Of a stretch of DNA of 64,000 nucleotides, positions 3,997 through 60,908 are shown one piece after another. The position numbers and the translations under genes are program-made. Under the pieces are notes generated by a model. That model was not told the DNA's origin, ran no database searches, and saw only the letters and a list, made by a program, of their open reading frames with translations. The stretch covers positions 186,001-250,000 of the IMG/VR virus record IMGVR_UViG_3300042541_001760; one strand, 5' to 3'. Each line of letters opens with the position of its first letter. The stretch's first letter is position 1.

Positions 3997-3997
3997 T

Positions 3998-4564: not shown

Positions 4565-4565
4565 A

Positions 4566-25777: not shown

Positions 25778-26395
25778 ATGAAAAACATATTATTTTTAGA
25801 TGAACAAATTAAAAGAATCTACGAAGTGTCATATACTATTTCGGAATCAAGAGGTAAGAATAGACAGAACATTATTAATGATGTGGTAATAGAATCCTTA
25901 AAATCCGATATATACTATAATGATTGTGTGTTTAAAAAAGAAGTTATAATCCCCGGAACAAAATTACTATGGGGTAAATACTTTCCTGTTGATATATGCG
26001 TATATAAAGATAATACTCTAATTGAGATTATTTTAAATAAGGCGCCTTCATCAAATATAAAGCAAAATAGAATTAATTCACTTAATGGTATTAATTCAGA
26101 CATAACAAGATTATCTAAATTAGAAAATATAAAAATTTCTTTAATTAATTTTTTACCTAAGATATCCCCTTTCTTTAAAAGAGATGAAAGTATTAAATCT
26201 TTTGAGAAAAATGAGCCTTTTTTCTTATCTACTTCTGGCGCCTTTTATAAATTCGATGTTGATGAAATATATGTTACTTTTGAAATTAATAATTTATATA
26301 AATGTAATTCAAAAGTTGATGTTAGAAATTTATTTTTGGTGAATCCTATAAAAAATGTGAATTTAATTCAAAAAAATTATAAAAGTTTAACTTAA
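25778..26395 (+). CDS. Putative type II restriction endonuclease
   Basis: Adjacent to and convergent with an MTase; PVD...E...K.P.SN.KQN..N segment; shares the very AT-rich composition of the MTase. Confidence 0.45.
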   Translation: MKNILFLDEQIKRIYEVSYTISESRGKNRQNIINDVVIESLKSDIYYNDCVFKKEVIIPGTKLLWGKYFPVDICVYKDNTLIEIILNKAPSSNIKQNRINSLNGINSDITRLSKLENIKISLINFLPKISPFFKRDESIKSFEKNEPFFLSTSGAFYKFDVDEIYVTFEINNLYKCNSKVDVRNLFLVNPIKNVNLIQKNYKSLT

Positions 26396-27840
26396 TAAGT
26401 ATAACTCTTTATAGTTGTGGTGGATACACTCAACCAAACATCATCAGATTTACTTTTATCTGATAAAATTTTATTATTTAACTCACAAAAACTATGGAAA
26501 TTACCACTTGAGATTATTTTAACGAACTCTTCTTTCATTCCTTTTTTAATATCGATTAACAATCCAGACATAACTAGACAATTTTCTTTTTCGGGTATTT
26601 CAATATAATGTATGTTTCTTGATCTTAGGAATGTTAATGGTAGTATTATGTAATCACCTTTTTTTTCTTTTAGTAATCCTTGCCTTCTACCGTAAGCATA
26701 CCAAGTATCATAATTTGACGTTTTTCCTTTATCTCTTGATAATAAATCATTTTTTCTACTTAAAAGATAATCATAACAAAATGGATAATCTCGTTTAAGG
26801 TTATTTTCATTTATTATTTCACCATTTACGTAAGGATATATGATGTATTTATACTCGCTAAAATTTCTACTTGTGGTTGCTTTTATATATTTTTTACAAA
26901 TGTTTTTTTCTATTTTAAAACCATTCTTATAACAAAAATCCTCGTCATTATAATCCATTTTAAAAACATCGTCCTTTATTGTTGCCAATCCACCAGAATA
27001 ATAATTAACCATATCACTTAGTTTATTGTTACCGTATTTTATTTCCTCAAATATCCATTTGTTAAGAGATAAATCTTTTTTGTTTTTAATAATATTTAAT
27101 TTATTTGTTTCATATAAAACAACATCAGAAATATTTTCTTCACATATAACTATTGATGTGTAGGTTGATATATTATCCCATACTTTTTCATTCTTAAAAT
27201 CATAAATATATGATACTCGTTCTTTTATTATTTCTCTTATAAAAGACCCTGATTTATTTTTTATAAAAGAATTTGGTATAATAAAACCTACTTTTTTTGA
27301 ATGTATTAATGATTTTTCCAAAAAAGCATAATATAAATCAATATTACCTAATGAAATTGATTTTAACTCTCCTTTTAACGAATTTAAATAATCTTTGTTT
27401 ATATTTTGAATTCGGACATATGGTGGATTTCCAAGTATAACATCATAATCCATTTTCTGTATTAGAAAATCACCTTGTATAATATTATTAAATGATAATT
27501 CACCATCATGTTTAAAATATTCAAAATACCCATTTAATAGTAATTTAAATTCATTAAGAAAATCTTTATTTATATCATAACAGAATAAATTATTATTTAC
27601 AAAATTGGCAATTTCCTTTATAGAATAATCTTTTTGTCTGAAAAACTCTAATAGTGAAAAAACGAAAACTCCTTTACCGACACTTGGCTCACAGATAATT
27701 TCATTTATTTTTGGATTAATTCTATTAATAATAATATCACATATGGTTTTGTCTGTGAAAACAACACCATTTTCTTTAATGGATTTTTTATCTTTCTGAT
27801 TAAAGTAACTTGAATTACTTATTATTTTGTCTAAATTCAT
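26392..27840 (-). CDS. Eco57I/TaqI-like N6-adenine DNA methyltransferase
   Basis: GVVFT, EPSVGKGVF (motif I), GNPPYVR (motif IV), DLYYAFLE, GFIIPNS. Confidence 0.9.
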   Translation of the reverse strand: MNLDKIISNSSYFNQKDKKSIKENGVVFTDKTICDIIINRINPKINEIICEPSVGKGVFVFSLLEFFRQKDYSIKEIANFVNNNLFCYDINKDFLNEFKLLLNGYFEYFKHDGELSFNNIIQGDFLIQKMDYDVILGNPPYVRIQNINKDYLNSLKGELKSISLGNIDLYYAFLEKSLIHSKKVGFIIPNSFIKNKSGSFIREIIKERVSYIYDFKNEKVWDNISTYTSIVICEENISDVVLYETNKLNIIKNKKDLSLNKWIFEEIKYGNNKLSDMVNYYSGGLATIKDDVFKMDYNDEDFCYKNGFKIEKNICKKYIKATTSRNFSEYKYIIYPYVNGEIINENNLKRDYPFCYDYLLSRKNDLLSRDKGKTSNYDTWYAYGRRQGLLKEKKGDYIILPLTFLRSRNIHYIEIPEKENCLVMSGLLIDIKKGMKEEFVKIISSGNFHSFCELNNKILSDKSKSDDVWLSVSTTTIKSYTY

Positions 27841-37834: not shown

Positions 37835-40111
37835 TTATATATCAAGCTTAACCAAGAATTGTTGTATACTCTGTCTTTCTATGGGTGATTGTAACTTAGC
37901 AATAGCCATTAGGTCTCTAACATTGTCATATAAAGCCACTTCACTTATATATGATGGTACTCCTGCCGTCCAAGTCGGATTTGATGGGTAATTAAACTCG
38001 TTTTGATTTAGATTACACAACCATCTCATTTCATATATGGTCGCCTGTATTTCTGTTTCAATATTACCGTAGAAGTAATACTCATCTCCGAAGTTAAGGG
38101 TTTGTCCTGTTTGTCCAACTGTGGGTAATGTCACGTAATTATTTAAGTTATATGTAAGTGCCAAATCGTAATCGGACTTTGTGATATACAATGTGGTTCC
38201 TGTAATACCGCTAGTCGTGATTTTACCTCCAACTATGGTTGCCGATAATTGATTTGTTACATCTATTTTTTTCCATCCTGTCGGGCTTGGTTTTCCTTCT
38301 CCACTTACTTTCTGACATAGTATTTCAAAAGAATCATAAGTAAAATTACCAAGACACCCAAACTCATTTCCGAATGTAATTGCGATATCTTGACTAGTGC
38401 TATTACAAGTTTGATTAGGACCCAATATTGATGAATAATAATTACAATGTAATGAATTAGTATAGAAAAGGCTATTTGAGAATCTATATGTCACATACAT
38501 ATAATCAGTATTTCCCGTTAATACACCTTCTCCGTTTGGAGTTGATAGCACTAATCTCGGTGCCGGTAATGTCCAATTTCTGTTGGACTTATATGACATT
38601 GCCGCGATTATTTCCTCATCGTCAATAACTATCGTATTTAAATCGGGAAACACTTTACCTATTCTACTTGGGTATCCGTCAATTACGTTCGCATTTGTAT
38701 CCCAAAGATGATAATATCTATGACCCGGATTGTTCATATCCGTATTTTTATTTGAGGTTAGATAATGTTCTTGGAACAGTCCTAATGTTTCAAATTCTAC
38801 GTTTGGTGGGTCAACATAAAATGTTTGTCCTTGGCAACAGTCTGCTGATTTATGCCATTGTAACCAAGGTATTGTGAATCTGAAATTTCTTGCCATACCA
38901 ACCGTATTGGTTTCATTCAAAGGGTCATATGGTTGTAACGCAAATTTTTCACCATAAACAAAGTCAATGGTGTTATTAGTATAATGAACAATCGCTATTG
39001 CCTTTTGGTCTTTACCCGGTACAATGATTTTATCACCAAGAGAATTATAATAGTTAACAGAATCACTATCTGTTTGACCATTACTATTACTATATCCAAA
39101 GTATTCTTTACTACCCAAATAATTTACAGATCCAAAATTAGTATAATCCTTATAAGCAGAACCATTTAAACCTGCCGGTGATTCTGACCAAGGAATATTC
39201 ATATTCCATATATTAACATTAAATAAATCAACATCACATACAGATTCAAAATTAAAAACATCTTGATTCCAATGTGGTTCTGGCGTAGCACTGTCGTAGA
39301 AGTTAGTCATACCTGATGGGTACACCAAAACTCTCGCCTCACCTGTTACCGATGGGGTTGCATAGTTAGGAACATTTCTATCCACAGTGATTATATTACC
39401 ATTAACCCCAATAATTCTATATGTTAAAATTGGCGTACAACTTTGAAATGACATAAAACAAGATCTATCGCTTGGGGGTACTGGAGGGCATGGATTATAC
39501 GGTGAATAAACGGTTGTACATGGTGATGAAACCGAAGTATAAGTACAATTACAATTAGTTAATCCTAACCCATCATAATATATTGTAACAAAATCCCCTG
39601 CGGAAAATGAATATGTTGTTGCGGTATTACAAATACTCGGAACCGGAATTAAGGTCATAGTATTTTGACTAGGGCCTAAATTATTCATATCCACATAGTA
39701 ATTACCTGTCTTAACATATTCACTACCTGTTTTAGCACTCCAATTTGTAGGTAATGTGGTTGTGTCAGCACTAAAAAATCCTCTCATTGGGGCTACATTA
39801 TATACATTTGAAACTATAGAATCCATAAATGGTATTCCGTAAGTTGCTCCTGATAACGTATCAACATAATAAGGGTACTTAACATTTTGAAAATTGGCTT
39901 GGGGTACAGGCGCTCCATTTTGTGAATTAAAAGCGGGTTCTAACACAACACTATTTGTTTGATTAAAACCACTTATCGCGTTGTATGAAACCTCACTATC
40001 TCCAACTTGGAAATAAGTTATGTTAAAATTACCTTGTGATATTTTTTGTCTACCAATATCAGTAATTCTTGTATTAACTAAACCTGATGTATTTTTTAAT
40101 ATATAAGCCAT
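37835..40111 (-). CDS. Baseplate/tail-collar-type structural protein
   Basis: N-terminal TRITDIGRQKI..G...ITYFQVGDSE; C-terminal ISEVALYD...LMAIAKL..PI pattern of tail-collar/fibre-attachment proteins. Confidence 0.65.
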   Translation of the reverse strand: MAYILKNTSGLVNTRITDIGRQKISQGNFNITYFQVGDSEVSYNAISGFNQTNSVVLEPAFNSQNGAPVPQANFQNVKYPYYVDTLSGATYGIPFMDSIVSNVYNVAPMRGFFSADTTTLPTNWSAKTGSEYVKTGNYYVDMNNLGPSQNTMTLIPVPSICNTATTYSFSAGDFVTIYYDGLGLTNCNCTYTSVSSPCTTVYSPYNPCPPVPPSDRSCFMSFQSCTPILTYRIIGVNGNIITVDRNVPNYATPSVTGEARVLVYPSGMTNFYDSATPEPHWNQDVFNFESVCDVDLFNVNIWNMNIPWSESPAGLNGSAYKDYTNFGSVNYLGSKEYFGYSNSNGQTDSDSVNYYNSLGDKIIVPGKDQKAIAIVHYTNNTIDFVYGEKFALQPYDPLNETNTVGMARNFRFTIPWLQWHKSADCCQGQTFYVDPPNVEFETLGLFQEHYLTSNKNTDMNNPGHRYYHLWDTNANVIDGYPSRIGKVFPDLNTIVIDDEEIIAAMSYKSNRNWTLPAPRLVLSTPNGEGVLTGNTDYMYVTYRFSNSLFYTNSLHCNYYSSILGPNQTCNSTSQDIAITFGNEFGCLGNFTYDSFEILCQKVSGEGKPSPTGWKKIDVTNQLSATIVGGKITTSGITGTTLYITKSDYDLALTYNLNNYVTLPTVGQTGQTLNFGDEYYFYGNIETEIQATIYEMRWLCNLNQNEFNYPSNPTWTAGVPSYISEVALYDNVRDLMAIAKLQSPIERQSIQQFLVKLDI

Positions 40112-40139: not shown

Positions 40140-41753
40140 TTATGGGTTGTTAATAGACATAACATTAGTTTCTGGCGCCCCTGTGACATTACAACAAGTA
40201 CATCCATTAATTGATGAGGTACTTAGTATAAACACTTTATCGGTTGATTTAACGTAACAAGACAAGGGACTTAATTTAAGTATTGAAGTTATAACCGTTC
40301 CTGATATCACATCCACCCCTGATATTGTAATATTGTTATACGTTAAAGTGGTTGCAGTTGAATATTCCTTAGTGTTTGGTGGGCATATGCCGGTTGTTGA
40401 TCCAGATTGTGTTGAAGATGCGGTTGTTGGTGTTATACCTATAGGGACTCCATTTTTATGTACTTGAACAGTATTAGTTATACTTCCAAACGCCGGATTG
40501 GTCGCCACCATAAAATTATTATATTCGGATAAATCAAAAGTTATTATTGTACCGGATGGTAAGTTTGATATAATGTTATTATTTATGTCTCTAACAACAA
40601 CTTTAAATGTTAATTTTTTCTGTCCCACCCCTGTTGATACTATTGTATTATCTATTGTTAAATTATACGAATTTGTTGCCGGTCCGGCCGGAACGATTGC
40701 GTTCTGTTGTCTTACTGTTGACGATCCATCTTGTACCCAAATACTATAAGTACCCGCCGGTAAGTTATTAAACATTGGTGATTGTTGTGTTGTAATACCT
40801 CCATCTTTTGAATATATTACGGGTGGTTGACCGTTAAGGGGATTTATAATTAAAGATCCCGTAGAGTCGTTAACACAATTAGGGGCACTAATAGTTGGTG
40901 GATTTAAACTCATCACAGGCGCATTACAAGCCCCCGCATATGTGGTGGCATTACCCGCTGGTCCGAATAAAGTCCAACCACCAATTGGTGGAATACTCGC
41001 GTTCGTGTTTATTATCAATGTTGAGTCAATATCAACAAACCAATAAGCTTGTGATAATCCACCCCATCTCATATCGAGAGTACCAGAAATCCAAGTGGGT
41101 TTACCATTTACAATACTCCCCGTTGGTGTGAATGTATATAATGTTGTAATATTACCTGTAGTATATTGTAAACATAAATTAGGGTACACAACAGGAATTG
41201 GTGTCGGTGTTGGTGTAGGAGTTGGTGATGGTGTTTGACTAGGAACAATTAAAGAACAGGTTGTTGTTGCCGTATAATCAGACCCTCCGTTTGGCCAATT
41301 GTAGTCGGTTACTGTTACAGTATACACCCCATTAGAAGTGGCATTAGTTAAAGTAGGACCTAAAGTTCCTGTACTCCAAAGAATTTTATAAGGTGGTGTA
41401 CCACCCGATACTAACATAGTAATACTATTATTTAATAGATTTGGACTACAACTAATAGTCATTGGCGTTATTGTAACAATATCACACTGATTAACTCCTG
41501 TAACTCTATTACAGACATACAATGCGGTACATTCACCACAATTACCATAAGAACCCTCTAAAGTGACTCCTGGCGATAAAAAAGAATATGTGGGTGAATC
41601 AGGATACAATGAACCAGAACTAATAACAGTACAACAACCACTGAAATAATTGGGTATAATTACATACTTTATATCACCAATCGTTAATGTTGGAGAATTG
41701 GTTAGTGTAAACGTAAAACTGGAATCGCAACAGGATTTGAAATAATGGGTCAT
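40140..41753 (-). CDS. Putative tail fibre protein with Cys-rich N-module, two SprB-like repeats and PT linker
   Basis: VSGGTPPYKILWS...GVYTVTVTD; PNC...TGSL...NGQPP...FNNLPAGTYSIWVQD. Confidence 0.7.
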   Translation of the reverse strand: MTHYFKSCCDSSFTFTLTNSPTLTIGDIKYVIIPNYFSGCCTVISSGSLYPDSPTYSFLSPGVTLEGSYGNCGECTALYVCNRVTGVNQCDIVTITPMTISCSPNLLNNSITMLVSGGTPPYKILWSTGTLGPTLTNATSNGVYTVTVTDYNWPNGGSDYTATTTCSLIVPSQTPSPTPTPTPTPIPVVYPNLCLQYTTGNITTLYTFTPTGSIVNGKPTWISGTLDMRWGGLSQAYWFVDIDSTLIINTNASIPPIGGWTLFGPAGNATTYAGACNAPVMSLNPPTISAPNCVNDSTGSLIINPLNGQPPVIYSKDGGITTQQSPMFNNLPAGTYSIWVQDGSSTVRQQNAIVPAGPATNSYNLTIDNTIVSTGVGQKKLTFKVVVRDINNNIISNLPSGTIITFDLSEYNNFMVATNPAFGSITNTVQVHKNGVPIGITPTTASSTQSGSTTGICPPNTKEYSTATTLTYNNITISGVDVISGTVITSILKLSPLSCYVKSTDKVFILSTSSINGCTCCNVTGAPETNVMSINNP

Positions 41754-41799
41754 TTAATAATAATTCTTACAAACTAAATAATAATTGGTTATTTTTAGT

Positions 41800-41807
41800 T
41801 ATAAATA
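41800..41807 (-). promoter_or_regulatory. Putative late promoter TATTTATA
   Basis: Exact motif upstream of ATG 41753. Confidence 0.55.
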
Positions 41808-41845
41808 TCTTAATTAATGTTTTGTGGTATTAATATACCTTAGAG

Positions 41846-41853
41846 TATTTATA
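41846..41853 (+). promoter_or_regulatory. Putative late promoter TATTTATA
   Basis: Exact motif 4 nt upstream of ATG 41858. Confidence 0.55.
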
Positions 41854-41857
41854 TTAT

Positions 41858-42040
41858 ATGAAATTATTAAGAACAATAGAAAAGATGGTTACCGAATCTG
41901 AAAGAGCGTATGAAGAAGCATGTGAGAGAGGTGCTAAACCACAGGTGTTAGATAAATTAGAAAAAAACTACTTGGACTCACTTAAATTGATGTCTTTATA
42001 CGAGAGTGTTGAGAAAAATCAACAAGGGAAGACATCCTGA
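41858..42040 (+). CDS. Small protein (60 aa), leader MKLLRTIEKMVTES
   Basis: Own promoter motif; fills the gap between minus-strand genes. Confidence 0.6.
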   Translation: MKLLRTIEKMVTESERAYEEACERGAKPQVLDKLEKNYLDSLKLMSLYESVEKNQQGKTS

Positions 42041-42759
42041 CAATCATTACAATCCGTCATTGGTGGGAAAGGGAAAATATTGGATGTTTCTCTGTTTGTA
42101 ATATTATTCCAATCAATACTAGTATATGTTTCGTTGGGGGTTAAGTAATTAGCCACTACTGTGGTACATCCTGTGTATCCCGTGCCGCTACCCAAAGACG
42201 AGTTTGGTATATTAACATACCATCTTGTGTTAGGTTCAAATGTACTTTGGAATGTCTCATCTAAAGTGAATGTGTAGTCATAACAACAGGCACTAAAATA
42301 TGTTGGTGCTATCGCATCGTAACATTCCTGACAAGTCGTAAAAACCGGTTCAATATGAGTTAAAATCGATGCGGTGTTATTGGTGAATTGATATCCAGAA
42401 TATACCCAACACTGACCATATTCATTTAATGAAACAATATCTCCGAAATTAAGGTTTGGATTATCTTCCGTATAAACACAATTAGATAAATCACCACAAT
42501 TACAGAAAGTAAAATATACATTTGGTAGATACGTACAAGTAACTAATTGAAATTTTTCACAGGGGGCTATTGTCTCAATAATTTTAAGACCGACGGATGG
42601 TGCTCCACTAAATAATAGAGGTAGTGGTATTACATTAATTGGGGGTACATTATTGGTTATTGTATCAATATATTGACATCGGTTACCATAAACATCGCAA
42701 ATATATATTTCGTATGGTGGTGTAAGTCCCGTTATTGACGATATAATAATACTCTTCAT
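42019..42759 (-). CDS. Cys-rich modular structural protein
   Basis: Three modules with paralogs in 35462..35701 and 40140..41753. Confidence 0.7.
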   Translation of the reverse strand: MKSIIISSITGLTPPYEIYICDVYGNRCQYIDTITNNVPPINVIPLPLLFSGAPSVGLKIIETIAPCEKFQLVTCTYLPNVYFTFCNCGDLSNCVYTEDNPNLNFGDIVSLNEYGQCWVYSGYQFTNNTASILTHIEPVFTTCQECYDAIAPTYFSACCYDYTFTLDETFQSTFEPNTRWYVNIPNSSLGSGTGYTGCTTVVANYLTPNETYTSIDWNNITNRETSNIFPFPPMTDCNDCQDVFPC

Positions 42760-42766
42760 AACTTAT

Positions 42767-45061
42767 TTAACAAGATACACAATTTATATTATATAATATG
42801 GATACTTGTACCGTAATGTTTTGGTTTGATAAAGCGTCCGTGGTTTCTTCACAACTTGTGTTAACCGTAATTGTATTATTGTTGGTGTCAACTATAACTT
42901 CACCAATCCCTGTTACGTCACTTAGTAGTGTATCAACAGTATTATACCAACTACTATTTGCTGGAACGTCGTTTAAAGTTGTGGCGGTATAAAATGATTG
43001 AGAGTAAGAGTTTCCAGCCACTGTGGCAACCGCAGAGAATGTTGCCGAACTTAATAAACAATCCGTACAACCATTAGTTAAATCCAAATACCCTTCAAGT
43101 AACATTTTACCTAAAGTTCTTTCTGTAATACCACCACTTGATATCGTACTTTCACAAATATTGTACTCGCTCAAGTTTGATAATATAAATGATCCTGTTA
43201 CTATTACCGATTTAGTTATCGTACATCCGTCGGTGTCTTGTACTGTTAAAGTATATGTCCCTGCGGATAAATTATCAATTGCCGTACCTGTTTGACCATT
43301 GACATTTGATGACCATGTTAGGGTAAATGGGGGTATTCCTTGGAATATGTTAGCGAATATCTCTCCATTGTATCCGTTAGTGGAGCTTGTTGGTATTAAT
43401 ATAAAATTTATTTGCTCGCTCTCATCTATGTAGAAATTACTAGTTGATATACACCCATTACTATCCGTTACCGTCGCCTGATAATAACCTGACGATAAAT
43501 CATTAAAAGTATATGAACTCAATGGTATTTGACCTGATGGTGGAATAGGAAGTCCATTACCTCCTTGAATTGAATATATAAATGGTGATGTTCCGCCTGT
43601 CGTTTTAAATATCTTTACTATTCCATTATTACCCCCGCAAGTAGTTCCAGATGCTTGTGTCGTAACATTATATGATAAAGTTGACTGAACAACAACAGTA
43701 CCGCTATAAGTACAAATACCATCAGTTATTGTTAGTGTGTATGTATCAGGAAATAGATTATTGAACGAAGTATTTAAACTTTGTTGTGGTCGATTATCCG
43801 AATCCCCATTACTTTTTTTAAGTGAATAATCATAACTAGAATTTGGATTACCATTCAATGTTATTGAAATACTACCATTACTATTACCACAAACACTACT
43901 AATGACGTTAGTTGTTGCGACCGCAAAACTATTTGGTTGAGCTAAACTTACTTGTGTGTTAACACTACAAAGGGACGAATCGGTTACGGTTATATCATAA
44001 ATACCCCCATATAAATTAGGAAAGGTATATGTTTGTTGGTAAGATATATCAATATAATTTATTGATGGTATGTAATACCTATATGGTGGAGTACCATTTA
44101 TTACCGTTATCTGTATTGCCCCGTTGGGGGCAAAACAAGTCGGCGGTGTTGGAGTTATAGGCCCTAATGACACCGGAGCCACATCGGTAATAAGCGCATT
44201 TTTGGTTGATGTACAACCTTGTGCATCTGTTATAGTAACACTATAATCGCCAGCGGTTAATCCTGTTATTGAAACTCCAGTTAACGATACATTATTTTCT
44301 AATAATCCTGGTGTTGATGATGACCATAAATAAGTATATGGAGCAACTCCGGTTAATCCCGTAATAAATATTCTACCAACACCAGTACTAACATTACCAC
44401 AATTTGAGCTATTAACTGAATATAACCCATAATTTAATAGTGTGGAATTCTGTATTATAGAATTTTCACTTCTACCTGTACACCCTCCTCCGTCATCGGC
44501 AATTACATAATACATACCGTACGGTAAATTATCGAAAACGAATGTATCGGAGTTGGTGGATCCTGTTCTTATTAAATCAGGTTGATACGGTTCATTTGGT
44601 GGTGTATTAATAGGAGGTACTCTATTGTTATTATTTTCTAAATATAATTTATATGTGGCCAAACCGTTAGTATTAGCAACCGTTGCGGTTAAAGACCCAT
44701 TTACTAAACCACAAGTAGTTGGGGTTACGTTAGTAATCGACACACAACTAGATGCCGAAGAAACATATATGTTAAGTGTTGTTCTATTGTTTTGTGTTAA
44801 CTCGGTAGGTCCTCCACAAGAGTCATTTATTTCTAGTACATATAAACCTGCCGGTAGATTACTATATGTTCTCGGTCCATTTAAAATACCTGTTTCAACC
44901 GAAGGTCCTCCACCCTCATTTGGGGACCAAGGATTTGGTAGATACCAAGTAATACTCATCGGTTCTGATGTCGTAGATAGATTGAGGGTAAATGACCCCG
45001 ATGCATTATTTTGACAGTCACCAACTACACTAAAATCACTAAAATTAAAATCGCAAGCCAT
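42767..45061 (-). CDS. Structural protein with about seven SprB-like repeats
   Basis: Repeats C...NG.I.I....GTPPY.Y.W.......L..G.Y.VTVTD..GC. Confidence 0.8.
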   Translation of the reverse strand: MACDFNFSDFSVVGDCQNNASGSFTLNLSTTSEPMSITWYLPNPWSPNEGGGPSVETGILNGPRTYSNLPAGLYVLEINDSCGGPTELTQNNRTTLNIYVSSASSCVSITNVTPTTCGLVNGSLTATVANTNGLATYKLYLENNNNRVPPINTPPNEPYQPDLIRTGSTNSDTFVFDNLPYGMYYVIADDGGGCTGRSENSIIQNSTLLNYGLYSVNSSNCGNVSTGVGRIFITGLTGVAPYTYLWSSSTPGLLENNVSLTGVSITGLTAGDYSVTITDAQGCTSTKNALITDVAPVSLGPITPTPPTCFAPNGAIQITVINGTPPYRYYIPSINYIDISYQQTYTFPNLYGGIYDITVTDSSLCSVNTQVSLAQPNSFAVATTNVISSVCGNSNGSISITLNGNPNSSYDYSLKKSNGDSDNRPQQSLNTSFNNLFPDTYTLTITDGICTYSGTVVVQSTLSYNVTTQASGTTCGGNNGIVKIFKTTGGTSPFIYSIQGGNGLPIPPSGQIPLSSYTFNDLSSGYYQATVTDSNGCISTSNFYIDESEQINFILIPTSSTNGYNGEIFANIFQGIPPFTLTWSSNVNGQTGTAIDNLSAGTYTLTVQDTDGCTITKSVIVTGSFILSNLSEYNICESTISSGGITERTLGKMLLEGYLDLTNGCTDCLLSSATFSAVATVAGNSYSQSFYTATTLNDVPANSSWYNTVDTLLSDVTGIGEVIVDTNNNTITVNTSCEETTDALSNQNITVQVSILYNINCVSC

Positions 45062-51039: not shown

Positions 51040-52789
51040 CCGTATTTATTGTTGATAAAGGTGTTGACGCACCTTCAGGGATTACTCTAAATATCGTATT
51101 AGTAAAAGGATAATGAACCCCATTTAAAAACGGATAATCAACTCCAATACCATCGGTATCTATAAACCCATATGTATATATATCTCTCCAAATGAAAGTT
51201 CCATTGGTTTTTGAAAAAACAGCATAATCAGGTATTTCACTTACCGTTGCAGGGTCTCCATCCTCAATATATGATGAAAAATCCCTTATTTTAATTGGGT
51301 TATGTGGTTTATAGTAGTACCCTAGCGGATTTGCCGGTGGTGCTTGTTGCGTTATGTTTATATTAAAATGAGTAGGATTATATATTATTTTATGATAATA
51401 CTCGGAAATAACTCTCTCGGTATATTCATAATCATTCCACTCACAAAAATCACCATCAAGAGTATCTCCATTTATTAATGGTTTGTTATAGTAAAAAGTT
51501 TTACCATTGACCGCATATGATATTGTTGGTATGGACGTATATGCGTTTGGTGTTAGGTTTTGTGGGGCATTGTCCCACCAATCAGATGGTTGTCCATTTT
51601 TTAATGGTATATTAAAATCAAAACCTTGCTTCAACGCAATATTTGAATTTACAGATGGATAGGTGGGACTTGATGTCCATCCAAATCTACCAATCCACTG
51701 AAAAGTAAAGAATAGTTGGGTTATAGGTCGGTTTTGATTGTCAACTAAATCATCTATTGATATGTCTTTTGAGAAAGATAATGTATATGATTGACTACCT
51801 TCTTTTACCGAAATCCTTGATACCTTATTCGGAGTTAATCCTGATGGTTCATATTGCTTAATTACCTTGAATGGGTTTAATTCAAATCCTGCGTTTACCA
51901 ACATCGCATCCTGCGGATTTGTTATTATTTTATGTCTTCTAATATAATATTCAGACATTGTATCTTGGTAGTTATTCTCGTCAATAACTCTTTTAAATGT
52001 CCCTGTAGTTCCCGCATCAAAAGTGTTTCCAGTATATCCTAAATTTGAAATACTAAACACATATTCATCTGACCCATAATCACCATCACCTAATTCATAA
52101 ACTTGAAATAAACTTTGTCCATTATAATTAATAGATAGGTAAGCGAACTCACCGACACTTAATCCATGTCTACAAACAGATCTAAATGTTATTAAACTTT
52201 GTCCGTTTGATGTAGAACCAGTTATGATAAATGGTATTCCGTCAAACGCCGTCCAATTTAAAGTCGTATTGGTCATTGGTTCAACCGCCTTTAGAGTTTT
52301 ATTTACATTATCATAAGGATAACTAATAAAAAAATTCCAATTATAAGATGACGCACTTGTACCAATGAAATTAATATGATTATTCGGTCCGGTAGTATAA
52401 CCCACAACATTATTATCAGTCCTCATTAAATCAAATTCATTATACAATGGATAACCTGACCAATAAACCGAATTACTATTACTACAAAACTGTCTAGACG
52501 ATGTTAAGGCATTAACATAATATAGATTTTCAGTAAATGGTTTATAATCAGTTTGACCATAATAAGTATTTTTAAACAAATATGTTATTTTGGTAACTGG
52601 TCTAAATGTAGTTGATGATTGTCTTTCATTTTCAAACACCTGAGCTAAATCAATAGTATTACTTCTATCAAATTCAACAGATTCCTTGGAGGTCTGTGAT
52701 AAACCAACATCAACCATATTATCAACAATTGGTGATGATTTGTACCTTAAAGTACTAAGGACTATTTTTGTATTATTCTCGTTTCCCAT
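51008..52789 (-). CDS. Putative structural protein (593 aa)
   Basis: Coupled in baseplate operon. Confidence 0.7.
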   Translation of the reverse strand: MGNENNTKIVLSTLRYKSSPIVDNMVDVGLSQTSKESVEFDRSNTIDLAQVFENERQSSTTFRPVTKITYLFKNTYYGQTDYKPFTENLYYVNALTSSRQFCSNSNSVYWSGYPLYNEFDLMRTDNNVVGYTTGPNNHINFIGTSASSYNWNFFISYPYDNVNKTLKAVEPMTNTTLNWTAFDGIPFIITGSTSNGQSLITFRSVCRHGLSVGEFAYLSINYNGQSLFQVYELGDGDYGSDEYVFSISNLGYTGNTFDAGTTGTFKRVIDENNYQDTMSEYYIRRHKIITNPQDAMLVNAGFELNPFKVIKQYEPSGLTPNKVSRISVKEGSQSYTLSFSKDISIDDLVDNQNRPITQLFFTFQWIGRFGWTSSPTYPSVNSNIALKQGFDFNIPLKNGQPSDWWDNAPQNLTPNAYTSIPTISYAVNGKTFYYNKPLINGDTLDGDFCEWNDYEYTERVISEYYHKIIYNPTHFNINITQQAPPANPLGYYYKPHNPIKIRDFSSYIEDGDPATVSEIPDYAVFSKTNGTFIWRDIYTYGFIDTDGIGVDYPFLNGVHYPFTNTIFRVIPEGASTPLSTINTVALPTTDECE

Positions 52790-55700
52790 TAGTCAGCAAA
52801 TGCGTCTGTGTCAATCCATTTAGCGGTAAATCTATCGAAAGCCGATGCCCCTTTAGCTAATCCAAAATAAAAATAGAATGGAGCGCCTAAGTTGTATTTA
52901 CCGGATATCCCAGGTTCCGGTTTATAATCACTTTCACCTGTTGCTGGATTAATGACTAAAGGCCCATCAACATTATAAATCCAACCTTTATTGTATTTTA
53001 TTTCAGTTACGCTAGGACTTGGTTGGAATGTTCTCGATCCATTTACACCTCCGTACAGTCTATCTATTTTTTGATATCCGTATTTGAATGCGTTAGCACC
53101 CGCACCACCAAAAACCCAGTCATTTGTTTGTTTTCCGAAAATATTATCATTACCACTATTATTAAAAATTTGCCATAAATAAAATGGGACTGTTTGTGTT
53201 GTAACCGGGATATAAGTAAAATTACAATCATTATTTATTCCAATAAGACCATCTGGATTATATAAAGTTCTATTTGGTGATATATAATCTCTAAGTTGAC
53301 TATCGCCAGTATAAAAAATACCAAAAGTAATATCCTTATAACTACCAACCCCACCCGGAAAATATAAAGGTGAGTTAAATCCTGAATTAATAGCTGGCTC
53401 AGGATAATTTGCAGGTTCAAAAGCGGAGATACCTAATTGTGAATTGGTTGCAATCATTTGAGAAAAATCCGCATCAACGAATCTTTTAGGACGTGAAAAA
53501 TAATTCATAATACTAGCACCCGCAGGTGTCCCAAATAACGCTCCAAAACTTGTACTAGCAAATCTTGACAATATGAATATATTCAATATTTCTGAAGTAT
53601 CTCCGAATGTTGTACTATTTAACTTATTCATAATATACCCATCCCAATTTCCGCTTTGAGATAAAAATTTTTGTAGTTCGTCTCTTGGACCTAAGTCCAT
53701 CATCGTCGTTGGGAACATTAAATTTCTACTATTTCCTAAAAGATTTGATCCGTCATAAAACCCTTTTTTACCTACGAAATCATCTGTAGCTTCATCATAT
53801 GGTGAACTCCTATAATAAAAATTAGAAGTGTCAGGGTCTAAGTATATTGTATCTTTACAATATTTATTATATGGTATATTTGGTGGATTTCCATTTGGTC
53901 CGGTAAAATATCTTGTTGTTTTAAATGGGAACATATACAATGACCCATTAACCCAATTATTAAAAAACGTATGTGAAAATACTTCCCTACAAGCTCCAAA
54001 ATTAATATTCATTCGTGATAACCACTCAGTAACTAATTGTAAGTCTTTAGTTAAATGTGCCCCTAAATAATTTGCATGTACTAAATTATAACAAGACCCA
54101 CCAATAAAAAATTGGGCATATCCTCCTGATGTATAAAATTGACAAGATGCTGCCGGTAAAATATCTAGTGTATCATTAACATTTTGATAACAACCTATTG
54201 GGACTAAATGTTCACAAGCAAAAGAATCTAATACTTTATCAACCGATCCAAAACTTTCTGGTTCAGTTGATCCGGTAATTCTAATATCAGGGTCATCACC
54301 GGGAAACGCTTGAGTCCCTGACGCTGGGTTTACACCGGCAACAACACCTTCATCAGATAGTTGATATACGGTAAATTGCCCGTTAGCCATCATATTCATA
54401 CCTTGCGGTATAATCGTATTAACTGTATTAAAAGATTGAAATAGGTCGGATGTCGGCATTCTGTCAGTCCTCATTACAATTCTATTACTATCTGACATTA
54501 TAGTATTAACAGTAGGGAGGTATTTTGGAGAAAAGTATACTGACCCTAACGCCGTTCTAGTTCCATTATTTAAAGTATTTATTTCAGATCTCATACCAAC
54601 CATAGATCCACCTTCAACACTCTCCCCAATAGCATATCTTTTACCCACAAATTGCATAATTTCAACATTAGCGGGAGGTGCAGGAGGTACGGTAGGTGCA
54701 ACATAATTTACAGGAAATCCGCAGTAACCACTATCTGATGGACCATCAATCTGAGAACCTGGTAGTCTAGCATACATATTCTTACCACCAACTCTTAACC
54801 CCCCTCCTGTTGTTCCATTAGTTCCACCAATAAAAGTATATTCCGCTATTGATGAATACATTGCGGGTGGTGTTCCCCCTGGTGCGTAACCAACTACATT
54901 ACTATTTTCATCCAATGATGAGTAATTAGAGCTTCGATATGTTGGGAATGGTGTCCATTGATCCGGTTGGAAGTGATAAGAAGGGAAGAATAGTCTACCA
55001 TTAGAATATCCGGTATCTACCGAGGTATTATTAATAATATTTGTATGATTTACGCATCTATGAGCATTATTATAGGCAATTACATCGGATCCAATTTGAA
55101 GCGATTGACCAAAATCTAAACCATCATTAGGTTGTAATGGGATGTTCATTTTGAAATCACCAATAACCGAAACATCAAAATGGGTAGTTCTACCAAATAA
55201 ACGACCTAAACCATATTTTATGGGTATCCTACTTGAATGGGGGTCAACACCTCTAACCATTATAGTTATTAGGGCATTTGGTTTATCTGAATATAATGAC
55301 CAAAGGTTAATCCAAGACCAAAGTCCAGGACTGTTGGTATTTGCTCTTATATCGGGTCCGTTAGTCCCAATAGATTGATTAATTGGCGTCCAATTATTAA
55401 ATATCCTCGCGAAGAAACTTTCTTGTTCTCTTTTATCTTGAAGCCATCCCGACGAGACAAGTATATTACTGTATTCATCAAATGTCATTGCGGTAATAAC
55501 TTGAAAGTATTCAATACCTGTTGGGTATTTTAGATATCTATCCGTATCTGAATTAGTTTGAGTTATATTGTAATTAGTAACCTTTCTACCTCCCGTAATG
55601 GGGTCTGTGTAACTAACAGTTGTTGTACCACTAACGTTTATAGGATTACCCGTTACTGAATATGTACCATACGCATTTGCTTGAGTTGTGGCGCTCATAT

Positions 55701-58700
55701 TAACATCAACGCCGTCATAAGGATTATTAAATGTTAAAATAGTACCAGATTCAATTTTTTCCTCCAACATTAACATCATTATATTATCGTAATGAGTTCC
55801 ACCATTGAATCCCTCATTAAATCTGACTCTTATTTGATTTGTACCTCCACCTAAACAATAATCACTACCATTAACGGTATCTATAACTCTAACACTATTA
55901 TTAGAATTTCCAACATATAAATAATCATTAGTCGTATTATACACCGCAAAACTAGGGGTTGATCCAACGGATATCGTATTAATCACAGAATTAATTGAGG
56001 TATCAATAACACTAACTGTATTGGATAAGGTATTTCCAACATATAAACGATTTTCCCCTGAAACATACGTACCAAAGGAAGGATTTGTTCCTGGTCCTAT
56101 GGATATTATTGTTATCAACGAATTATTATTTATGGTATCAAAAACACTAACATCACCGGAACCACTATTTCCAACATATAGATAACCATTATCAGGATTA
56201 TATGTCCCAAAAGTAGGGTTTGTCCCTGGACCTATAGTTATTAAGTCAATTACCGTAACACCAGATATTACACTAATAGTACCATCCCCTCTATTTCCAA
56301 CATATAAACAATTATTATTGGGGGTATATGTTCCGAAAGAAGGATTATTACCAACTGATATTGTTGGTATTGTACTAGACGTACCTGATATTACACTAAC
56401 AGTACCATCTCCTTTATTTCCAACATAAACGCAATTATTACTAGGGTTGTATGTTCCGAAAATAGGTTGGTCTCCAACATTTTTAATTCCAGCAATTCCA
56501 TTATTTACGGTATTTATAATAGTAACAGTATCACTCGCATTATTTCCAACATATAGATATTGATTAACAGGATTATATGTTCCGAAAGAAGGATTATTAC
56601 CAAAAAGAATTATCGAACCACTCGCAACATTGTTTGTGGTATTTATTGGTTTAACTTGACCATTAGCACCACCAAATCCAACATATAAAGTATTATTGAC
56701 ATACGTTCCAAAAGTAGGATTTGAACCGACTGATATCGTACTAACCCCCCCATTATTCGCGGTATCAATAGCACTAACATTACTAGATCCATTATTTCCA
56801 ACATATAAACGACCATTTGGCGCATATGTTCCAAAGATAGGATTTGTTCCAACGGTGATTGATCTTGTATCCGTTCTCTTATTTAAATCACCTGTAGTAT
56901 TAATCTCAGCATTACCTTCACCAAAAAACTTACCCTTAAAGTTCATCATATTAACGCTTTCCGGTATAGTTAATCCTTGAACCCAAATAAAACGACCATC
57001 ACTAAAATTATCTCTTTGTGGTGTTCTAAAAGCGGCTGAATATTGTAAATTATTAGATATCCAACCCGCAGCAAATCTTTGTATTGGCCCAATAACCTCA
57101 TCATAATCAGTATTAACGTCATAAGATCCTGGATCAATTATATTTGCCAATATACTACTATTAGTAAATAGTGGTGGTCTATATGTGGATCCTGGATTAT
57201 TAAACCCTTCGTTTGTTGGAGTACATGAACAGAGTTGGCATTCGGGAAAAACAAATAACGGGATTGCTAATTGACTAAATCTATTTTCTATGTCAATTAA
57301 AACCTGCCAATTTTCAAAGGGTCGTAAAGTAAACGATAAAAGGCTACCACTATATCCGATTCCGAAGTTCCTTATTTTTGAAACTAGAAAGCATATAACG
57401 TGAAATATTGTTACTACCAATTTTAATATGATAGAAATAAAGGACGATACAATTACAAATAGTAAAAACAATAAATCAAATCTATATTGAGCATCATTGG
57501 TTGGAAATTTATTACTTGTACTTTCACAAGTTTCATCGGTAATGTTTTTAATTCCTAAGTATTGTCTTTGTCTATTACCTTTCGTGAATCTTGTTACAAG
57601 TTGAGATATCGTATAAACTTTATTATATGACATCTCGTAGAATTTATCTTCACAATTTATAGCCTCCTGTATAATATCATCACCAAATGATGACCCTGAA
57701 TACCCATAATCATCCCAATCTAAACTAAATGCATATGATTTCTTAGCCGCAATATATCCACCTGAAGTGGATGCGAAATTTATCAGAGGATCATCATCGG
57801 GATTATTTGAATCCCACCCATTTTCTTTTACGTTTGGTATTAAGAAGTTTGCTCGTTTAATTGGTTCACCCAAACTTGGTGACTGATTCCATTTTACTTT
57901 AAATCTATATTTAGATTTGGTTGGTATTCCTTTTCTCTCATCATTTGAGAATATTTGCTCACCAAATTCATTTGTTATTATAAAATCCAAATTCATTGGT
58001 ACATCTAATAGCCAAGCACCATCAGAATCGATAACTTTACCGTTGTTTTCAAACTCGTACTCCTCTAAAATAGGTCTACCGTTTATATCTTGTTTAATCG
58101 TTTGTCTAATCGCCAATATCTGACCCGGTCCTGAAATTAAATTACATTGGTATCCAGATTTTTTAATTGGTTTACAATTTTTTCTTAACGCCGATTCATC
58201 AGTATCGGATATGATTGAACCCATAAAAATCGCGGTAGGTTTAATGGTGATACTAGCCTCGGCAGTTAAATCAAAATCGGTTCTTGTAATTGATGGTTGA
58301 CAAATTTCAGGTTCACCCCACAATGGTAAAACCTCAACTGTCTTATTTAAGAAGATAATCTGTGGTAATGTTGTTAAATTCTCTGATGTTTGGAATTTAG
58401 TTCCGTTAACTTGACTCTCGGTGGCTACACCTATTCTTATTAAATCCTGTGGTGATTGTGAAAACGGACCCATATCTGATAAATCCAAATTCATTAAGAT
58501 TGTGTAACTACCAACAGGAACTCCAAATATCATAAAGTCACCACTGTCATTGGTTGTTACAGTAAATTTATAATACTTGTCATATAACTCAATTGCGGTA
58601 GGATTTGTTAATACATCTTCTAAGTCAGGAAATGACCCTGTGGCTGCGTGTCCAGGAAATGATGGTTTGTAAGGTAATAAATTATATTTATAACCATCCT

Positions 58701-60902: not shown

Positions 60903-60908
60903 AATCTA

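What the first reader, a model, noticed from the sequence alone, without database searches (positions are those of the whole stretch)
40140..45061. Tail-cluster proteins built from SprB-like gliding-adhesin repeats
Seen: 42767..45061 has about seven, and 40140..41753 two, repeats matching C...NG.I.I...GGT.PY.Y.W....L.aG.Y.vTVTD..GC. Both lie in the baseplate/tail cluster. Established: this repeat is characteristic of SprB, the filamentous gliding adhesin of Flavobacterium. Inference: the virion may use host-derived adhesin repeats as fibre shafts or as mimics that engage the gliding/T9SS track. This parallels the T9SS cargo operon.
Basis: partly seen in the sequence, partly recalled or inferred. 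Interest (0 to 1): 0.75.

Follow-up and report, generated by a model that had tools for sequence, protein, structure and literature searches.

The report
SprB-type Ig repeats in phage tail proteins
Two genes in the tail-fibre region of a 261-kb lake-water phage really are built from the bead-like repeat found in Bacteroidota gliding adhesins, but they lack every secretion signal of those adhesins, so the repeat most likely serves as rod or spacer material, as in other phage tail proteins.

Summary
The ORF at 42767..45061(-), here p764 (764 aa), has seven tandem beta-sandwich repeats and a 120-aa alpha/beta end domain. The ORF at 40140..41753(-), p537 (537 aa), has two repeats. Pfam SprB only just passes for p764 (28.3 bits, cut-off 28) and fails for p537. 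Stronger tests agree with homology. A profile of bacterial SprB repeats scores p764 at E 6e-53 and p537 at 2e-17. A single-sequence search with p537 finds thousands of giant multi-repeat proteins, and all five that I checked carry 9-32 SprB repeats.

Neither protein has a signal peptide or a T9SS sorting domain, although an 858-aa protein of the same genome has both. They are therefore not gliding-track cargo. Relatives occur in at least 354 viral contigs, always in the same tail gene order. All 120 homologues listed have the seven-repeat array (7 detected in 107) and the same end domain, and the middle repeats are the least conserved. Each repeat position is older than the clade, and no bacterial donor can be resolved.

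The best reading is a beaded rod or spacer in tail-fibre-like proteins. Presence in the virion is not shown. Mimicry of the gliding track has no support. UniProt already labels relatives "SprB repeat" automatically.

The parts
42767..45061 (-). p764: 764-aa protein made of seven SprB-type Ig-like repeats, a linker and a C-terminal alpha/beta domain
   Evidence: ORF. Pfam SprB 28.3 bits. Bacterial repeat profile E 6.4e-53. AlphaFold2 model, mean pLDDT 80.
44747..45028 (-). p764 repeat 1 (aa 12-105): divergent and without an SprB signature
   Evidence: Leave-one-out score only 12.3 bits. Seven predicted strands, pLDDT 56-81. Groups with its positional counterpart in the 57%-identity homologue P0025 (SH-aLRT 98); the copy from the 40% homologue P0086 joins only in an unresolved group shared with the repeat-7 copies.
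44405..44746 (-). p764 repeat 2 (aa 106-219): carries a roughly 25-aa insertion
   Evidence: Leave-one-out 31 bits. Only a partial match (11.8 bits) to the bacterial profile.
44141..44404 (-). p764 repeat 3 (aa 220-307)
   Evidence: Leave-one-out 38.7 bits. Bacterial profile 49.2 bits.
43895..44140 (-). p764 repeat 4 (aa 308-389): the one repeat above the Pfam SprB cut-off
   Evidence: Pfam best stretch aa 303-330. 34.3 bits in the six-frame search. Bacterial profile 38.6 bits.
43643..43894 (-). p764 repeat 5 (aa 390-473)
   Evidence: Leave-one-out 35.7 bits. Bacterial profile 18.5 bits.
43382..43642 (-). p764 repeat 6 (aa 474-560)
   Evidence: Leave-one-out 49.2 bits. Bacterial profile 31.8 bits.
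43160..43381 (-). p764 repeat 7 (aa 561-634): lacks the opening Cys
   Evidence: Leave-one-out 44.5 bits. Bacterial profile 54.4 bits.
42770..43126 (-). p764 C-terminal alpha/beta domain (aa 646-764), preceded by a low-confidence linker (aa 625-645)
   Evidence: Model of aa 640-764: pLDDT 85, pTM 0.78. No convincing fold match. Present directly after repeat 7 in all 120 homologues listed.
40140..41753 (-). p537: 537-aa protein. Order of parts: Cys-rich N-terminal region, SprB-type repeat A, Pro/Thr linker, unassigned domain, SprB-type repeat B, unassigned C-terminal region
   Evidence: ORF and translation. Bacterial repeat profile E 2.1e-17. Single-sequence search: 7395 hits, dominated by giant multi-repeat proteins.
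41253..41483 (-). p537 repeat A (about aa 91-167)
   Evidence: Pfam SprB 22.9 bits in the protein scan and 26.7 bits in the six-frame search. Bacterial profile 29.4 bits. Giant proteins match aa 86-172 at 37-53% identity.
40653..40904 (-). p537 repeat B (about aa 284-367)
   Evidence: p764 profile 29.4 bits. Bacterial profile 31.3 bits. Giant proteins match aa 275-370.
42019..42759 (-). p246: Cys-rich (6.5%) 246-aa protein between the two repeat proteins, kept in the same position in relatives; role unknown
   Evidence: Same position in L001 and L003. No family match. Cys content. The complex test with the p764 C-terminus gave no answer.
59064..61367 (-). Baseplate anchor genes: gp25-like (60909..61367) and Baseplate_J/gp6-like (59064..60902). 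These define the tail module.
   Evidence: PF04965 47.4 bits, PF04865 31 bits, phrog_219 E 2.7e-22.

Best explanation
p764 and p537 are most likely tail-fibre-like parts of the virion's baseplate periphery, made in the cytoplasm. The phage is an uncultivated lake-water myovirus of at least 261 kb that probably infects Bacteroidota.

In these proteins the SprB-type repeat, an Ig-like beta-sandwich of about 75-90 residues, is used as building material. In p764 seven beads in a row form a rod. Assuming about 4 nm per Ig domain (my estimate, not measured), it would be roughly 25-30 nm long. A small conserved alpha/beta domain caps it. In p537 two beads space out other domains.

The middle beads act mainly as spacer. 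The two ends make the specific contacts: attachment to the virion at one end, and a partner or the cell surface at the other. The many invariant cysteines probably form stiffening disulfides once the particle is outside the cell, as in the solved grappling-hook protein GhpA.

Shown: repeat homology, architecture, absence of secretion signals, conserved gene order, conservation pattern.
Inferred: presence in the virion, the rod function, which end is attached, the disulfides, the host.
For: Homology:
- The p764-only profile finds full-length repeat units in Bacteroidota arrays that score 40-64 bits on Pfam SprB.
- The reverse, bacterial profile scores p764 at E 6e-53 and p537 at 2e-17.
- The p537 single-sequence search hits proteins of 2000-7400 aa with 20-87 matched stretches. 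All five checked carry 9-32 Pfam SprB repeats.

Fold:
- Seven beta domains are predicted with pLDDT about 80-90.
- The best PDB matches are GhpA fragments 9fly, 9flp and 9flw. The best AlphaFold DB matches are T9SS type-B, PKD and SprB-repeat proteins at 21-25% identity.

Not secreted:
- There is no N-terminal hydrophobic segment (Kyte-Doolittle maximum 0.75 and 1.29, against 2.49 for the genome's own T9SS cargo) and no room for one upstream.
- No CHU_C, TIGR04131 or Por_Secre_tail domain is present.

Tail context:
- gp25-like and gp6-like genes lie upstream, and 10 co-oriented packed genes follow.
- The same gene order is seen in relatives at 75%, 57% and 40% identity; the longest contigs recorded for those proteins are 147-316 kb.
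- The nearest cultured phage by gp6, Flavobacterium phage immuto, has its fibre and spike genes at the matching place.

Shaft-like behaviour:
- 107 of 120 homologues show exactly seven repeats. The 11 with six and the two odd counts (five and eight) look like a missed repeat 1 or truncated/atypical sequences; I did not inspect each.
- All 120 keep the end domain, and extra modules of 70-600 aa are added only after it.
- In the 73-79% identity tier, repeats 2-6 differ at 25-42% of positions, against 16-17% for repeats 1 and 7 and 12% for the end domain.

Cysteines:
- Cysteines at the repeat borders are invariant across 62 sequences.
- The GhpA stem has disulfides between neighbouring Ig-like domains (bioRxiv 10.1101/2024.01.29.577165).

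Spread: at least 354 IMG/VR viral contigs encode relatives.
Against: - No virion proteomics or imaging exists, so structural status rests on gene position alone.
- The other genes of the block have no family matches. p993 has only weak language-model leads to baseplate wedge proteins.
- The end domain has no recognisable fold relative (best Z 5.5, below background).
- There is no hypervariable tip of the kind usual in receptor-binding proteins.
- Which end attaches to the virion is unresolved.
- Oligomeric state is unknown. Classical fibres are trimers, whereas strings of Ig domains are often monomers.
- The complex prediction gave no answer.
- No RNA run was listed.
- The 36 bacterial repeats behind the reverse profile were chosen from hits of the p764 profile, which is partly circular. 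Searches do not depend on that choice.
Confidence: 0.6

Rival explanations
1. Decoration or accessory-adhesin model (Hoc-like). p764 is anchored by its conserved C-terminal domain to the capsid, sheath or baseplate surface. Its string of Ig-like beads points outward and gives weak, non-specific binding to polysaccharide, particles or cell surfaces. It is dispensable for infection.
For: - The layout (an Ig array plus a small conserved C-terminal domain) resembles that of T4 Hoc (Hoc's layout is from my own knowledge).
- There are weak PHROG matches to a Hoc-like head decoration family (E 0.0031) and to a 'virion structural protein' family (E 1.2e-5).
- There is a weak match to the decoration protein 5lxk (E 0.028).
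- The end domain is the most conserved part, and there is no hypervariable tip.
Against: - The gene sits inside the baseplate/fibre block, one base after the p993 stop codon.
- Some homologues add 70-600 aa after the end domain, which is awkward if that domain is buried on the virion.
- The PHROG and PDB matches are weak and come from the generic Ig part.
Confidence: 0.2
2. Adhesin-engagement model. The phage's SprB-type beads pair side by side with the host's own SprB-family filaments. The phage catches the moving gliding adhesin and is carried to the cell surface, much as flagellum-binding phages ride flagella.
For: - SprB and RemA are thought to be phage receptors in Flavobacterium johnsoniae, and phage resistance in flavobacteria often maps to gliding or T9SS genes (PMC9804748, PMC7345892, PMC13288928).
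- In GhpA, parallel strands of Ig-like repeats bind each other laterally by hydrogen bonds, and GhpA is the best PDB match of p764.
- The phage itself carries a T9SS type-B cargo protein with canonical SprB repeats.
Against: - Nothing in the sequence points to like-with-like binding.
- The repeats are old and diverged (only one of seven passes Pfam), and in a short-sequence tree they do not track any particular bacterial array.
- The spacer-like conservation of the middle repeats does not suggest a long binding surface.
- The host is unknown.
Confidence: 0.07
3. Non-virion model. The proteins are made late and freed at lysis as soluble factors (for example decoys or matrix binders), or they act inside the cell. 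They are not part of the particle.
For: - There is no direct evidence of virion incorporation.
- The high cysteine content (2.7-3.4%, against a genome median of 0.98%) is typical of extracellular proteins.
Against: - The position inside the tail module is strictly conserved across relatives down to 40% identity.
- There is no export signal.
- The repeat number is fixed at seven, which suggests a length-constrained structure.
Confidence: 0.05

Closest known systems
SprB repeat (Pfam PF13573), as in Flavobacterium johnsoniae SprB and many other Bacteroidota T9SS type-B surface proteins
   Same: The same repeat unit of about 75 aa, with the same motif and border cysteines. Homology holds in both directions over the full unit, and the fold is a predicted Ig-like beta-sandwich.
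   Different: - The phage proteins are small (764 and 537 aa, against 6497 aa for SprB; size from bioRxiv 10.1101/2024.01.29.577165).
- They have 7 and 2 repeats instead of dozens.
- They have no signal peptide, no CHU_C/type-B sorting domain and no PorP/SprF partner.
- The repeats are diverged: one of seven passes Pfam.
- The genes sit in a phage tail module.
GhpA grappling-hook protein of Aureispira (PDB 9fly, 9flp, 9flw)
   Same: It is the best solved structural match (Foldseek E 7e-18 to 1e-15, 16-18% identity). Both are strings of Ig-like repeats with conserved cysteines. GhpA shows that such strings can form stiff rods cross-linked by disulfides.
   Different: GhpA is a 5898-aa T9SS substrate with 52 stem repeats that assembles as a heptamer on the outer membrane. 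Nothing is known about the oligomeric state of p764. TM-scores are low (0.15-0.24) because the two strings bend differently.
BACON-domain tandem repeats in tail-associated proteins of crAssphage and other gut phages (de Jonge et al. 2019, PMC6949934)
   Same: A surface-protein domain typical of the host phylum (Bacteroidota) occurs as a tandem array in phage tail-associated proteins. In the crAssphage lineage the array is lineage-specific and distinct from the bacterial copies. This is the closest precedent for the phenomenon.
   Different: A different domain family (BACON, not SprB), a different habitat (gut, not lake water) and a different phage group (crAss-like podoviruses, not a roughly 260-kb myovirus).
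Ig-like domains on phage structural proteins in general (T4 Hoc, the Ig-like domain of lambda-type tip attachment protein J, T5 pb10)
   Same: Ig-like beads added to virion proteins as spacers or weak adhesins. There are weak matches to PF24421 Ig_J, a Hoc-like PHROG family and the decoration protein 5lxk. BFVD lists many phage proteins with Ig or FN3 arrays.
   Different: Those use other Ig families (I-set, FN3, Big_2), usually 1-4 copies. Here the whole protein is essentially an array of seven copies of the Bacteroidota-specific type.
UniProt entries A0A6J5LD72 and A0A6J5LDA4, 'SprB repeat [uncultured Caudovirales phage]'
   Same: A0A6J5LD72 (714 aa) matches the p764 model along its whole length at 31% identity (E 5.8e-62). 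It is a member of the same phage protein family and has already been labelled automatically.
   Different: These are only automatic names. I found no paper discussing them.

Membership tests
SprB repeat domain family (Pfam PF13573) | Score at or above the Pfam gathering cut-off (28 bits) | tested here: met
   p764: 28.3 bits as a whole protein and 34.3 bits for repeat 4 in the six-frame search. p537 alone does not reach it: 22.9 bits in the protein scan and 26.7 bits at best in the six-frame search.
SprB repeat domain family (Pfam PF13573) | Full-length homology of the roughly 75-aa unit to repeats in accepted bacterial SprB-repeat arrays | tested here: met
   - The p764 profile hits 62 units in six bacterial arrays (E 1e-26 to 1e-113 per protein).
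- The bacterial profile hits p764 at E 6e-53 (5 of 7 repeats at 18-54 bits) and p537 at E 2e-17 (both repeats at about 30 bits).
- The p537 single-sequence search hits giant proteins; the five checked carry 9-32 Pfam SprB repeats.
- Repeats 1 and 2 of p764 are not recovered, or only partly.
SprB repeat domain family (Pfam PF13573) | Ig-like beta-sandwich fold in a tandem string | tested here: met
   AlphaFold2 model with seven beta domains. The top structural matches are GhpA and T9SS type-B or SprB-repeat proteins. This is a prediction, not an experiment.
SprB-type gliding adhesin / T9SS type-B cargo | N-terminal Sec signal peptide | tested here: not met
   No hydrophobic N-terminal segment (Kyte-Doolittle maximum 0.75 for p764 and 1.29 for p537, against 2.49 for the genome's own cargo p858). 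The open frames extend only 8 and 0 codons upstream of the start. No dedicated signal-peptide predictor was available.
SprB-type gliding adhesin / T9SS type-B cargo | C-terminal type-B sorting domain (TIGR04131 / PF13585 CHU_C), or type-A (PF18962) | tested here: not met
   In the whole genome, CHU_C and TIGR04131 match only p858 and the 198-aa ORF at window 3400..3996. PF18962 gives only a 14-bit match inside a repeat of p764. NCBIfam finds nothing.
SprB-type gliding adhesin / T9SS type-B cargo | Cognate PorP/SprF-family outer-membrane partner encoded nearby | tested here: not met
   PF11751 finds nothing in the 261-kb record. The record is estimated to be 89% complete.
SprB-type gliding adhesin / T9SS type-B cargo | Movement along the cell-surface track and a role in gliding | not testable with these tools
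   Needs an isolated host and microscopy.
Phage tail fibre / baseplate-peripheral protein | Gene located in the baseplate/fibre module, with conserved gene order | tested here: met
   gp25-like and gp6-like genes lie upstream. The gene order is the same in relatives at 75%, 57% and 40% identity.
Phage tail fibre / baseplate-peripheral protein | Presence in the virion at the tail | not testable with these tools
   No isolate, proteome or map is available, and no RNA run was listed.
Phage tail fibre / baseplate-peripheral protein | Sequence or fold similarity to a known fibre, spike or baseplate family | tested here: not met
   There are no Pfam, PHROG or NCBIfam tail families apart from the generic Ig-driven matches. 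The end domain has no fold relative. tblastn against the immuto tail region finds nothing for p764 or p537.

The most novel reading that the evidence does not exclude
A widespread clade of lake-water jumbo phages uses fibres made of the host phylum's own adhesin repeat to zip onto SprB-family filaments, beta-sandwich string against beta-sandwich string as in the GhpA bundle, and so rides the gliding machinery to the cell surface. The same phages also make the infected cell display a phage-encoded SprB-like T9SS cargo protein (p858 and the small secreted-protein operon at window 3400..6607), which remodels or blocks that same receptor layer. This would be a phage strategy, both structural and host-manipulating, centred on the gliding/T9SS surface.
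Probability: 0.06. Interest if true: 0.8.

Novelty: new member of a known kind. Interest (0 to 1): 0.4.

Why it matters
- It adds the SprB repeat to the list of cell-surface Ig-like modules that phages reuse in tail proteins. With BACON in crAssphage, it is a second clear case of a Bacteroidota-specific surface domain appearing as a tandem array in a phage tail module.
- It gives a strong marker of host phylum for a large group of uncultivated lake-water phages of 150-320 kb: at least 354 viral contigs, and near-identical DNA in more than 20 lake samples.
- It offers a small, tractable seven-repeat protein for solving the structure of the SprB repeat. No experimental structure was found by sequence search, and the nearest solved structure by fold is GhpA.
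- The fixed repeat number and the invariant cysteines suggest a length-controlled rod stiffened by disulfides, which can be tested.
- Together with the phage-encoded T9SS cargo genes, it points to the gliding/T9SS surface as the arena of this phage-host interaction, although the finding itself does not show that.

Tried and rejected
- Nucleotide and protein searches against 50,697 GenBank phage records. No nucleotide match. p764 hits only one uncultured 642-kb phage at 28% identity. p537 hits nothing.
- tblastn of the whole tail block against the tail region of Flavobacterium phage immuto. The only match is a 72-aa stretch at the C-terminus of p758.
- Fold searches with a separate model of the end domain (PDB by Foldseek, AlphaFold DB clusters, VIA wide). 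Nothing rose above background, so no function can be read from the fold.
- Complex prediction of p764 residues 561-764 with the downstream protein p246. The result was 'no answer' and is not evidence either way.
- Sequence search of PDB with p993, p758, p2067 and p764. The only useful match is a beta-propeller in p2067.
- Language-model look-alikes for p993 and p758. All are virus-only clusters, with weak baseplate-wedge leads for p993.
- Sigma-70 promoter and terminator scan, and a scan for the T4 late-promoter motif TATAAATA. All were at or near chance, so nothing can be said about operon structure beyond the gene packing.
- Repeat tree to find a bacterial donor. Positional orthology is clear, but the deep nodes are unresolved with 78 columns.
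- Search for RNA runs. None was listed.
- I considered that p764 might itself be T9SS cargo and rejected it (see the membership test).

Full report
WHAT THE WINDOW IS. The window is bases 186001-250000 of a single 261,052-bp IMG/VR virus record. The record is linear, has 32% G+C, and is 89% complete by CheckV. It encodes a gp25-like baseplate wedge protein (60909..61367, PF04965 47 bits). Next to it is a Baseplate_J/gp6-like protein (59064..60902, phrog_219 E 2.7e-22). Replication and nucleotide-metabolism genes are also present (ribonucleotide reductase large subunit, primase, SbcC-like, RuvC-like). Downstream of gp6, on the minus strand, ten tightly packed genes run to 37835: p2067, p593, p281, p396, p302, p993, p764, p246, p537 and p758. 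The nearest cultured relative by gp6 is Flavobacterium phage immuto at 26% identity. Its fibre and spike genes lie at the matching position. Near-identical DNA occurs in more than 20 lake-water metagenome samples.

THE OBSERVATION. Both coordinate pairs are exact ORFs. In leave-one-out profile tests repeats 2-7 score 31-49 bits, against at most 14 bits for 1000 shuffles. Repeat 1 is marginal (12.3 bits). p537 contains two units, at about residues 91-167 and 284-367. No other protein of the tail block has the repeat.

ARE THEY SprB REPEATS? The 37-position Pfam model covers only the first half of the unit. It gives 28.3 bits for p764 (cut-off 28), with one repeat at 34.3 bits. p537 stays below cut-off. 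I therefore tested the whole unit in three ways.
- A profile built only from the seven p764 repeats finds 62 full-length units in six Bacteroidota proteins. Those arrays score 40-64 bits per unit on Pfam SprB.
- A profile built from 36 of those bacterial units scores p764 at E 6.4e-53 (repeats 3-7 at 18-54 bits) and p537 at E 2.1e-17 (both repeats at about 30 bits). The bacterial units were picked from hits of the p764 profile, which is partly circular.
- An independent single-sequence search of p537 against 1.84 billion representatives gives 7395 hits. Apart from five full-length orthologues, they are dominated by proteins of 2000-7400 aa with 20-87 stretches matching one or other p537 repeat at 32-53% identity. 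All five that I scanned carry 9-32 Pfam SprB repeats.

AlphaFold2 predicts seven beta-sandwich beads (mean pLDDT 80). The best solved matches are fragments of GhpA, the T9SS-secreted grappling hook of Aureispira. The best AlphaFold DB matches are T9SS type-B, PKD and SprB-repeat proteins at 21-25% identity. Homology to the SprB repeat family is established. The repeat is not specific to SprB itself: the five Bacteroidota genomes I looked at have 16-126 matches each, spread over many proteins.

WHAT THEY ARE NOT. A gliding adhesin of the SprB type needs a Sec signal peptide and a C-terminal T9SS type-B sorting domain. p764 and p537 have neither, and there is no room for an upstream signal peptide. 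The tests were able to find these features. The same genome, outside the window (G000 88742..91318, L007:4743-7319), encodes an 858-aa protein with a clear signal peptide, four canonical SprB repeats (95 bits), two PKD domains and a CHU_C sorting domain (62 bits). The 198-aa ORF at window 3400..3996 also has a CHU_C domain (56.6 bits). No PorP/SprF homologue is present. The tail-block proteins are therefore made and kept in the cytoplasm until lysis, as virion parts are, and cannot be loaded on the gliding track by the T9SS route.

THE FAMILY. More than 1300 database proteins match p764. The best 120 are all full-length relatives at 38-95% identity. At least 354 IMG/VR viral contigs (up to 318 kb) encode one. 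Three relatives examined, at 75%, 57% and 40% identity, sit in the same gene order from p2067 to p758. Of the 120 homologues, 107 show exactly seven repeats. The 11 with six, and the two odd counts (five and eight), look like a missed repeat 1 or truncated/atypical sequences; I did not inspect each. All 120 keep the 130-aa C-terminal region directly after repeat 7. Longer members add 70-600 aa only after it, and these additions are DUF285 repeats in some and unknown in most. In a repeat tree each positional repeat groups with its counterparts from the 57% homologue, and for most positions also the 40% homologue (SH-aLRT 81-99). The deeper branches among phage and bacterial repeats are unresolved. 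The array was therefore complete before this phage clade diversified. No donor, recent transfer or recent internal duplication can be claimed. p537 orthologues likewise keep two repeats at fixed positions; the 464-aa P0156, which begins at about p537 residue 170, shows only the second.

HOW IT PROBABLY WORKS. Among relatives at 73-79% identity, repeats 2-6 differ at 25-42% of positions. Repeats 1 and 7 differ at 16-17%, and the end domain at 12%. The fixed bead number, looser middle and tighter ends fit a rod of set length whose ends make the specific contacts. Cysteines at the repeat borders are invariant across 62 sequences. The fibre-block proteins are unusually rich in cysteine: p246 6.5%, p537 3.4% and p764 2.7%, against a genome median of 0.98%. 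In the solved GhpA stem, disulfides link neighbouring Ig-like domains and help to keep the rod straight (bioRxiv 10.1101/2024.01.29.577165). By analogy the phage rod may stiffen once it is in oxygenated lake water; this is inference. The end domain models confidently (pLDDT 85, pTM 0.78) but has no fold relative above background. Whether it docks on the virion, holds a partner or touches the cell is open. Modules are appended only after it in some relatives, which mildly favours the C-terminus as the distal end. Its high conservation mildly favours a docking role. I leave the orientation unresolved.

RIVALS. A Hoc-like decoration or accessory-adhesin role fits the layout and the weak PHROG and PDB matches. 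It fits the gene position less well. Three things give it some footing: flavobacterial phage resistance maps to gliding/T9SS genes, SprB is thought to be a receptor (PMC9804748, PMC7345892, PMC13288928), and GhpA strands pair laterally. Nothing in these sequences supports it directly. A non-virion role cannot be excluded without proteomics.

COMPARISON AND NOVELTY. Ig-like beads on phage structural proteins are well known. The closest precedent is the BACON tandem array in tail-associated proteins of crAssphage and other gut phages of Bacteroidota (PMC6949934). BFVD already holds a 714-aa relative named automatically 'SprB repeat [uncultured Caudovirales phage]' (31% identity, E 5.8e-62). Among 50,697 GenBank phage records, the only matches to the SprB-repeat regions of p764 or p858 are in two uncultured phages of 635-642 kb. 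I found no paper discussing SprB repeats in phage proteins. This is a new member of a known kind: a correct and tidy observation of moderate interest, with a speculative interpretation that the evidence does not bear out.

LIMITS. Virion presence, oligomeric state, host identity and the disulfides are all inferred. The structures are predictions. The complex prediction gave no answer. No RNA data were listed.

Noticed in passing
Outside the window: G000:C1:88742-91318 (+), i.e. L007:4743-7319: The phage encodes a complete T9SS type-B cargo protein of 858 aa. It has a Sec signal peptide, four canonical SprB repeats (Pfam 95 bits; a fifth, degenerate unit follows), two PKD domains and a CHU_C/TIGR04131 sorting domain (62 and 47.5 bits). 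An HNH endonuclease gene lies just upstream. The nearest bacterial relatives are Flavobacteriales, Vicingus and Bacteroidia MAGs at 28-39% identity. Among GenBank phages, only two uncultured phages of about 640 kb have a similar protein. A phage-encoded adhesin-like protein that the host T9SS would display may be more unusual than the tail proteins.
   Followed up: partly
window 3400..6607 (-): Four abutting ORFs (222, 458, 188 and 198 aa) each begin with a signal-peptide-like hydrophobic segment. The 458-aa ORF has a PKD domain and a weak WD40-like match. The 188-aa ORF has weak PKD and SprB-like matches. The 198-aa ORF ends in a CHU_C T9SS sorting domain (56.6 bits). The 222-aa ORF has no family match.
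   Followed up: partly
window 52789..58992 (-): The 2067-aa protein just after the gp6-like gene contains a YVTN-type beta-propeller similar to the Methanosarcina surface-layer protein 1L0Q (E 1.1e-26, residues 729-1014), with weak lactonase-propeller matches in Pfam. A propeller of this kind stood out to me in a protein at this position of a tail module.
   Followed up: no
L004:13582-14793 (relative on a 292-kb contig): An IS605 OrfB/TnpB-type gene (403 aa) sits between the counterparts of p246 and p537. In the window the matching place is a 265-bp gap (41754..42018). In relative L001 it holds a 60-aa ORF on the opposite strand. The gap looks like an insertion-tolerant spot inside the fibre block.
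   Followed up: no
window 42019..42759 (-): p246, between the two repeat proteins, has 16 cysteines in 246 residues (6.5%) and no family match. Its position directly after a fibre-like gene would suit a tip or assembly factor, but the one complex test gave no answer.
   Followed up: partly
window 37835..40111 (-): The last 72 residues of p758 are the only part of the whole tail block with detectable similarity to the cultured Flavobacterium phage immuto (25% identity to the C-terminus of its ORF 164, E 4e-6). Its look-alike clusters are all virus-only.
   Followed up: no
Outside the window: G000:C1:8407-9402 (+): A 332-aa open frame has 16.9% cysteine, by far the highest in the genome. I did not check whether it is a real gene.
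   Followed up: no
window 26392..27840 (-): An Eco57I-type N6 DNA methylase (PF07669, 69 bits) lies next to the SbcC-like gene. It may be an anti-restriction or self-modification function.
   Followed up: no
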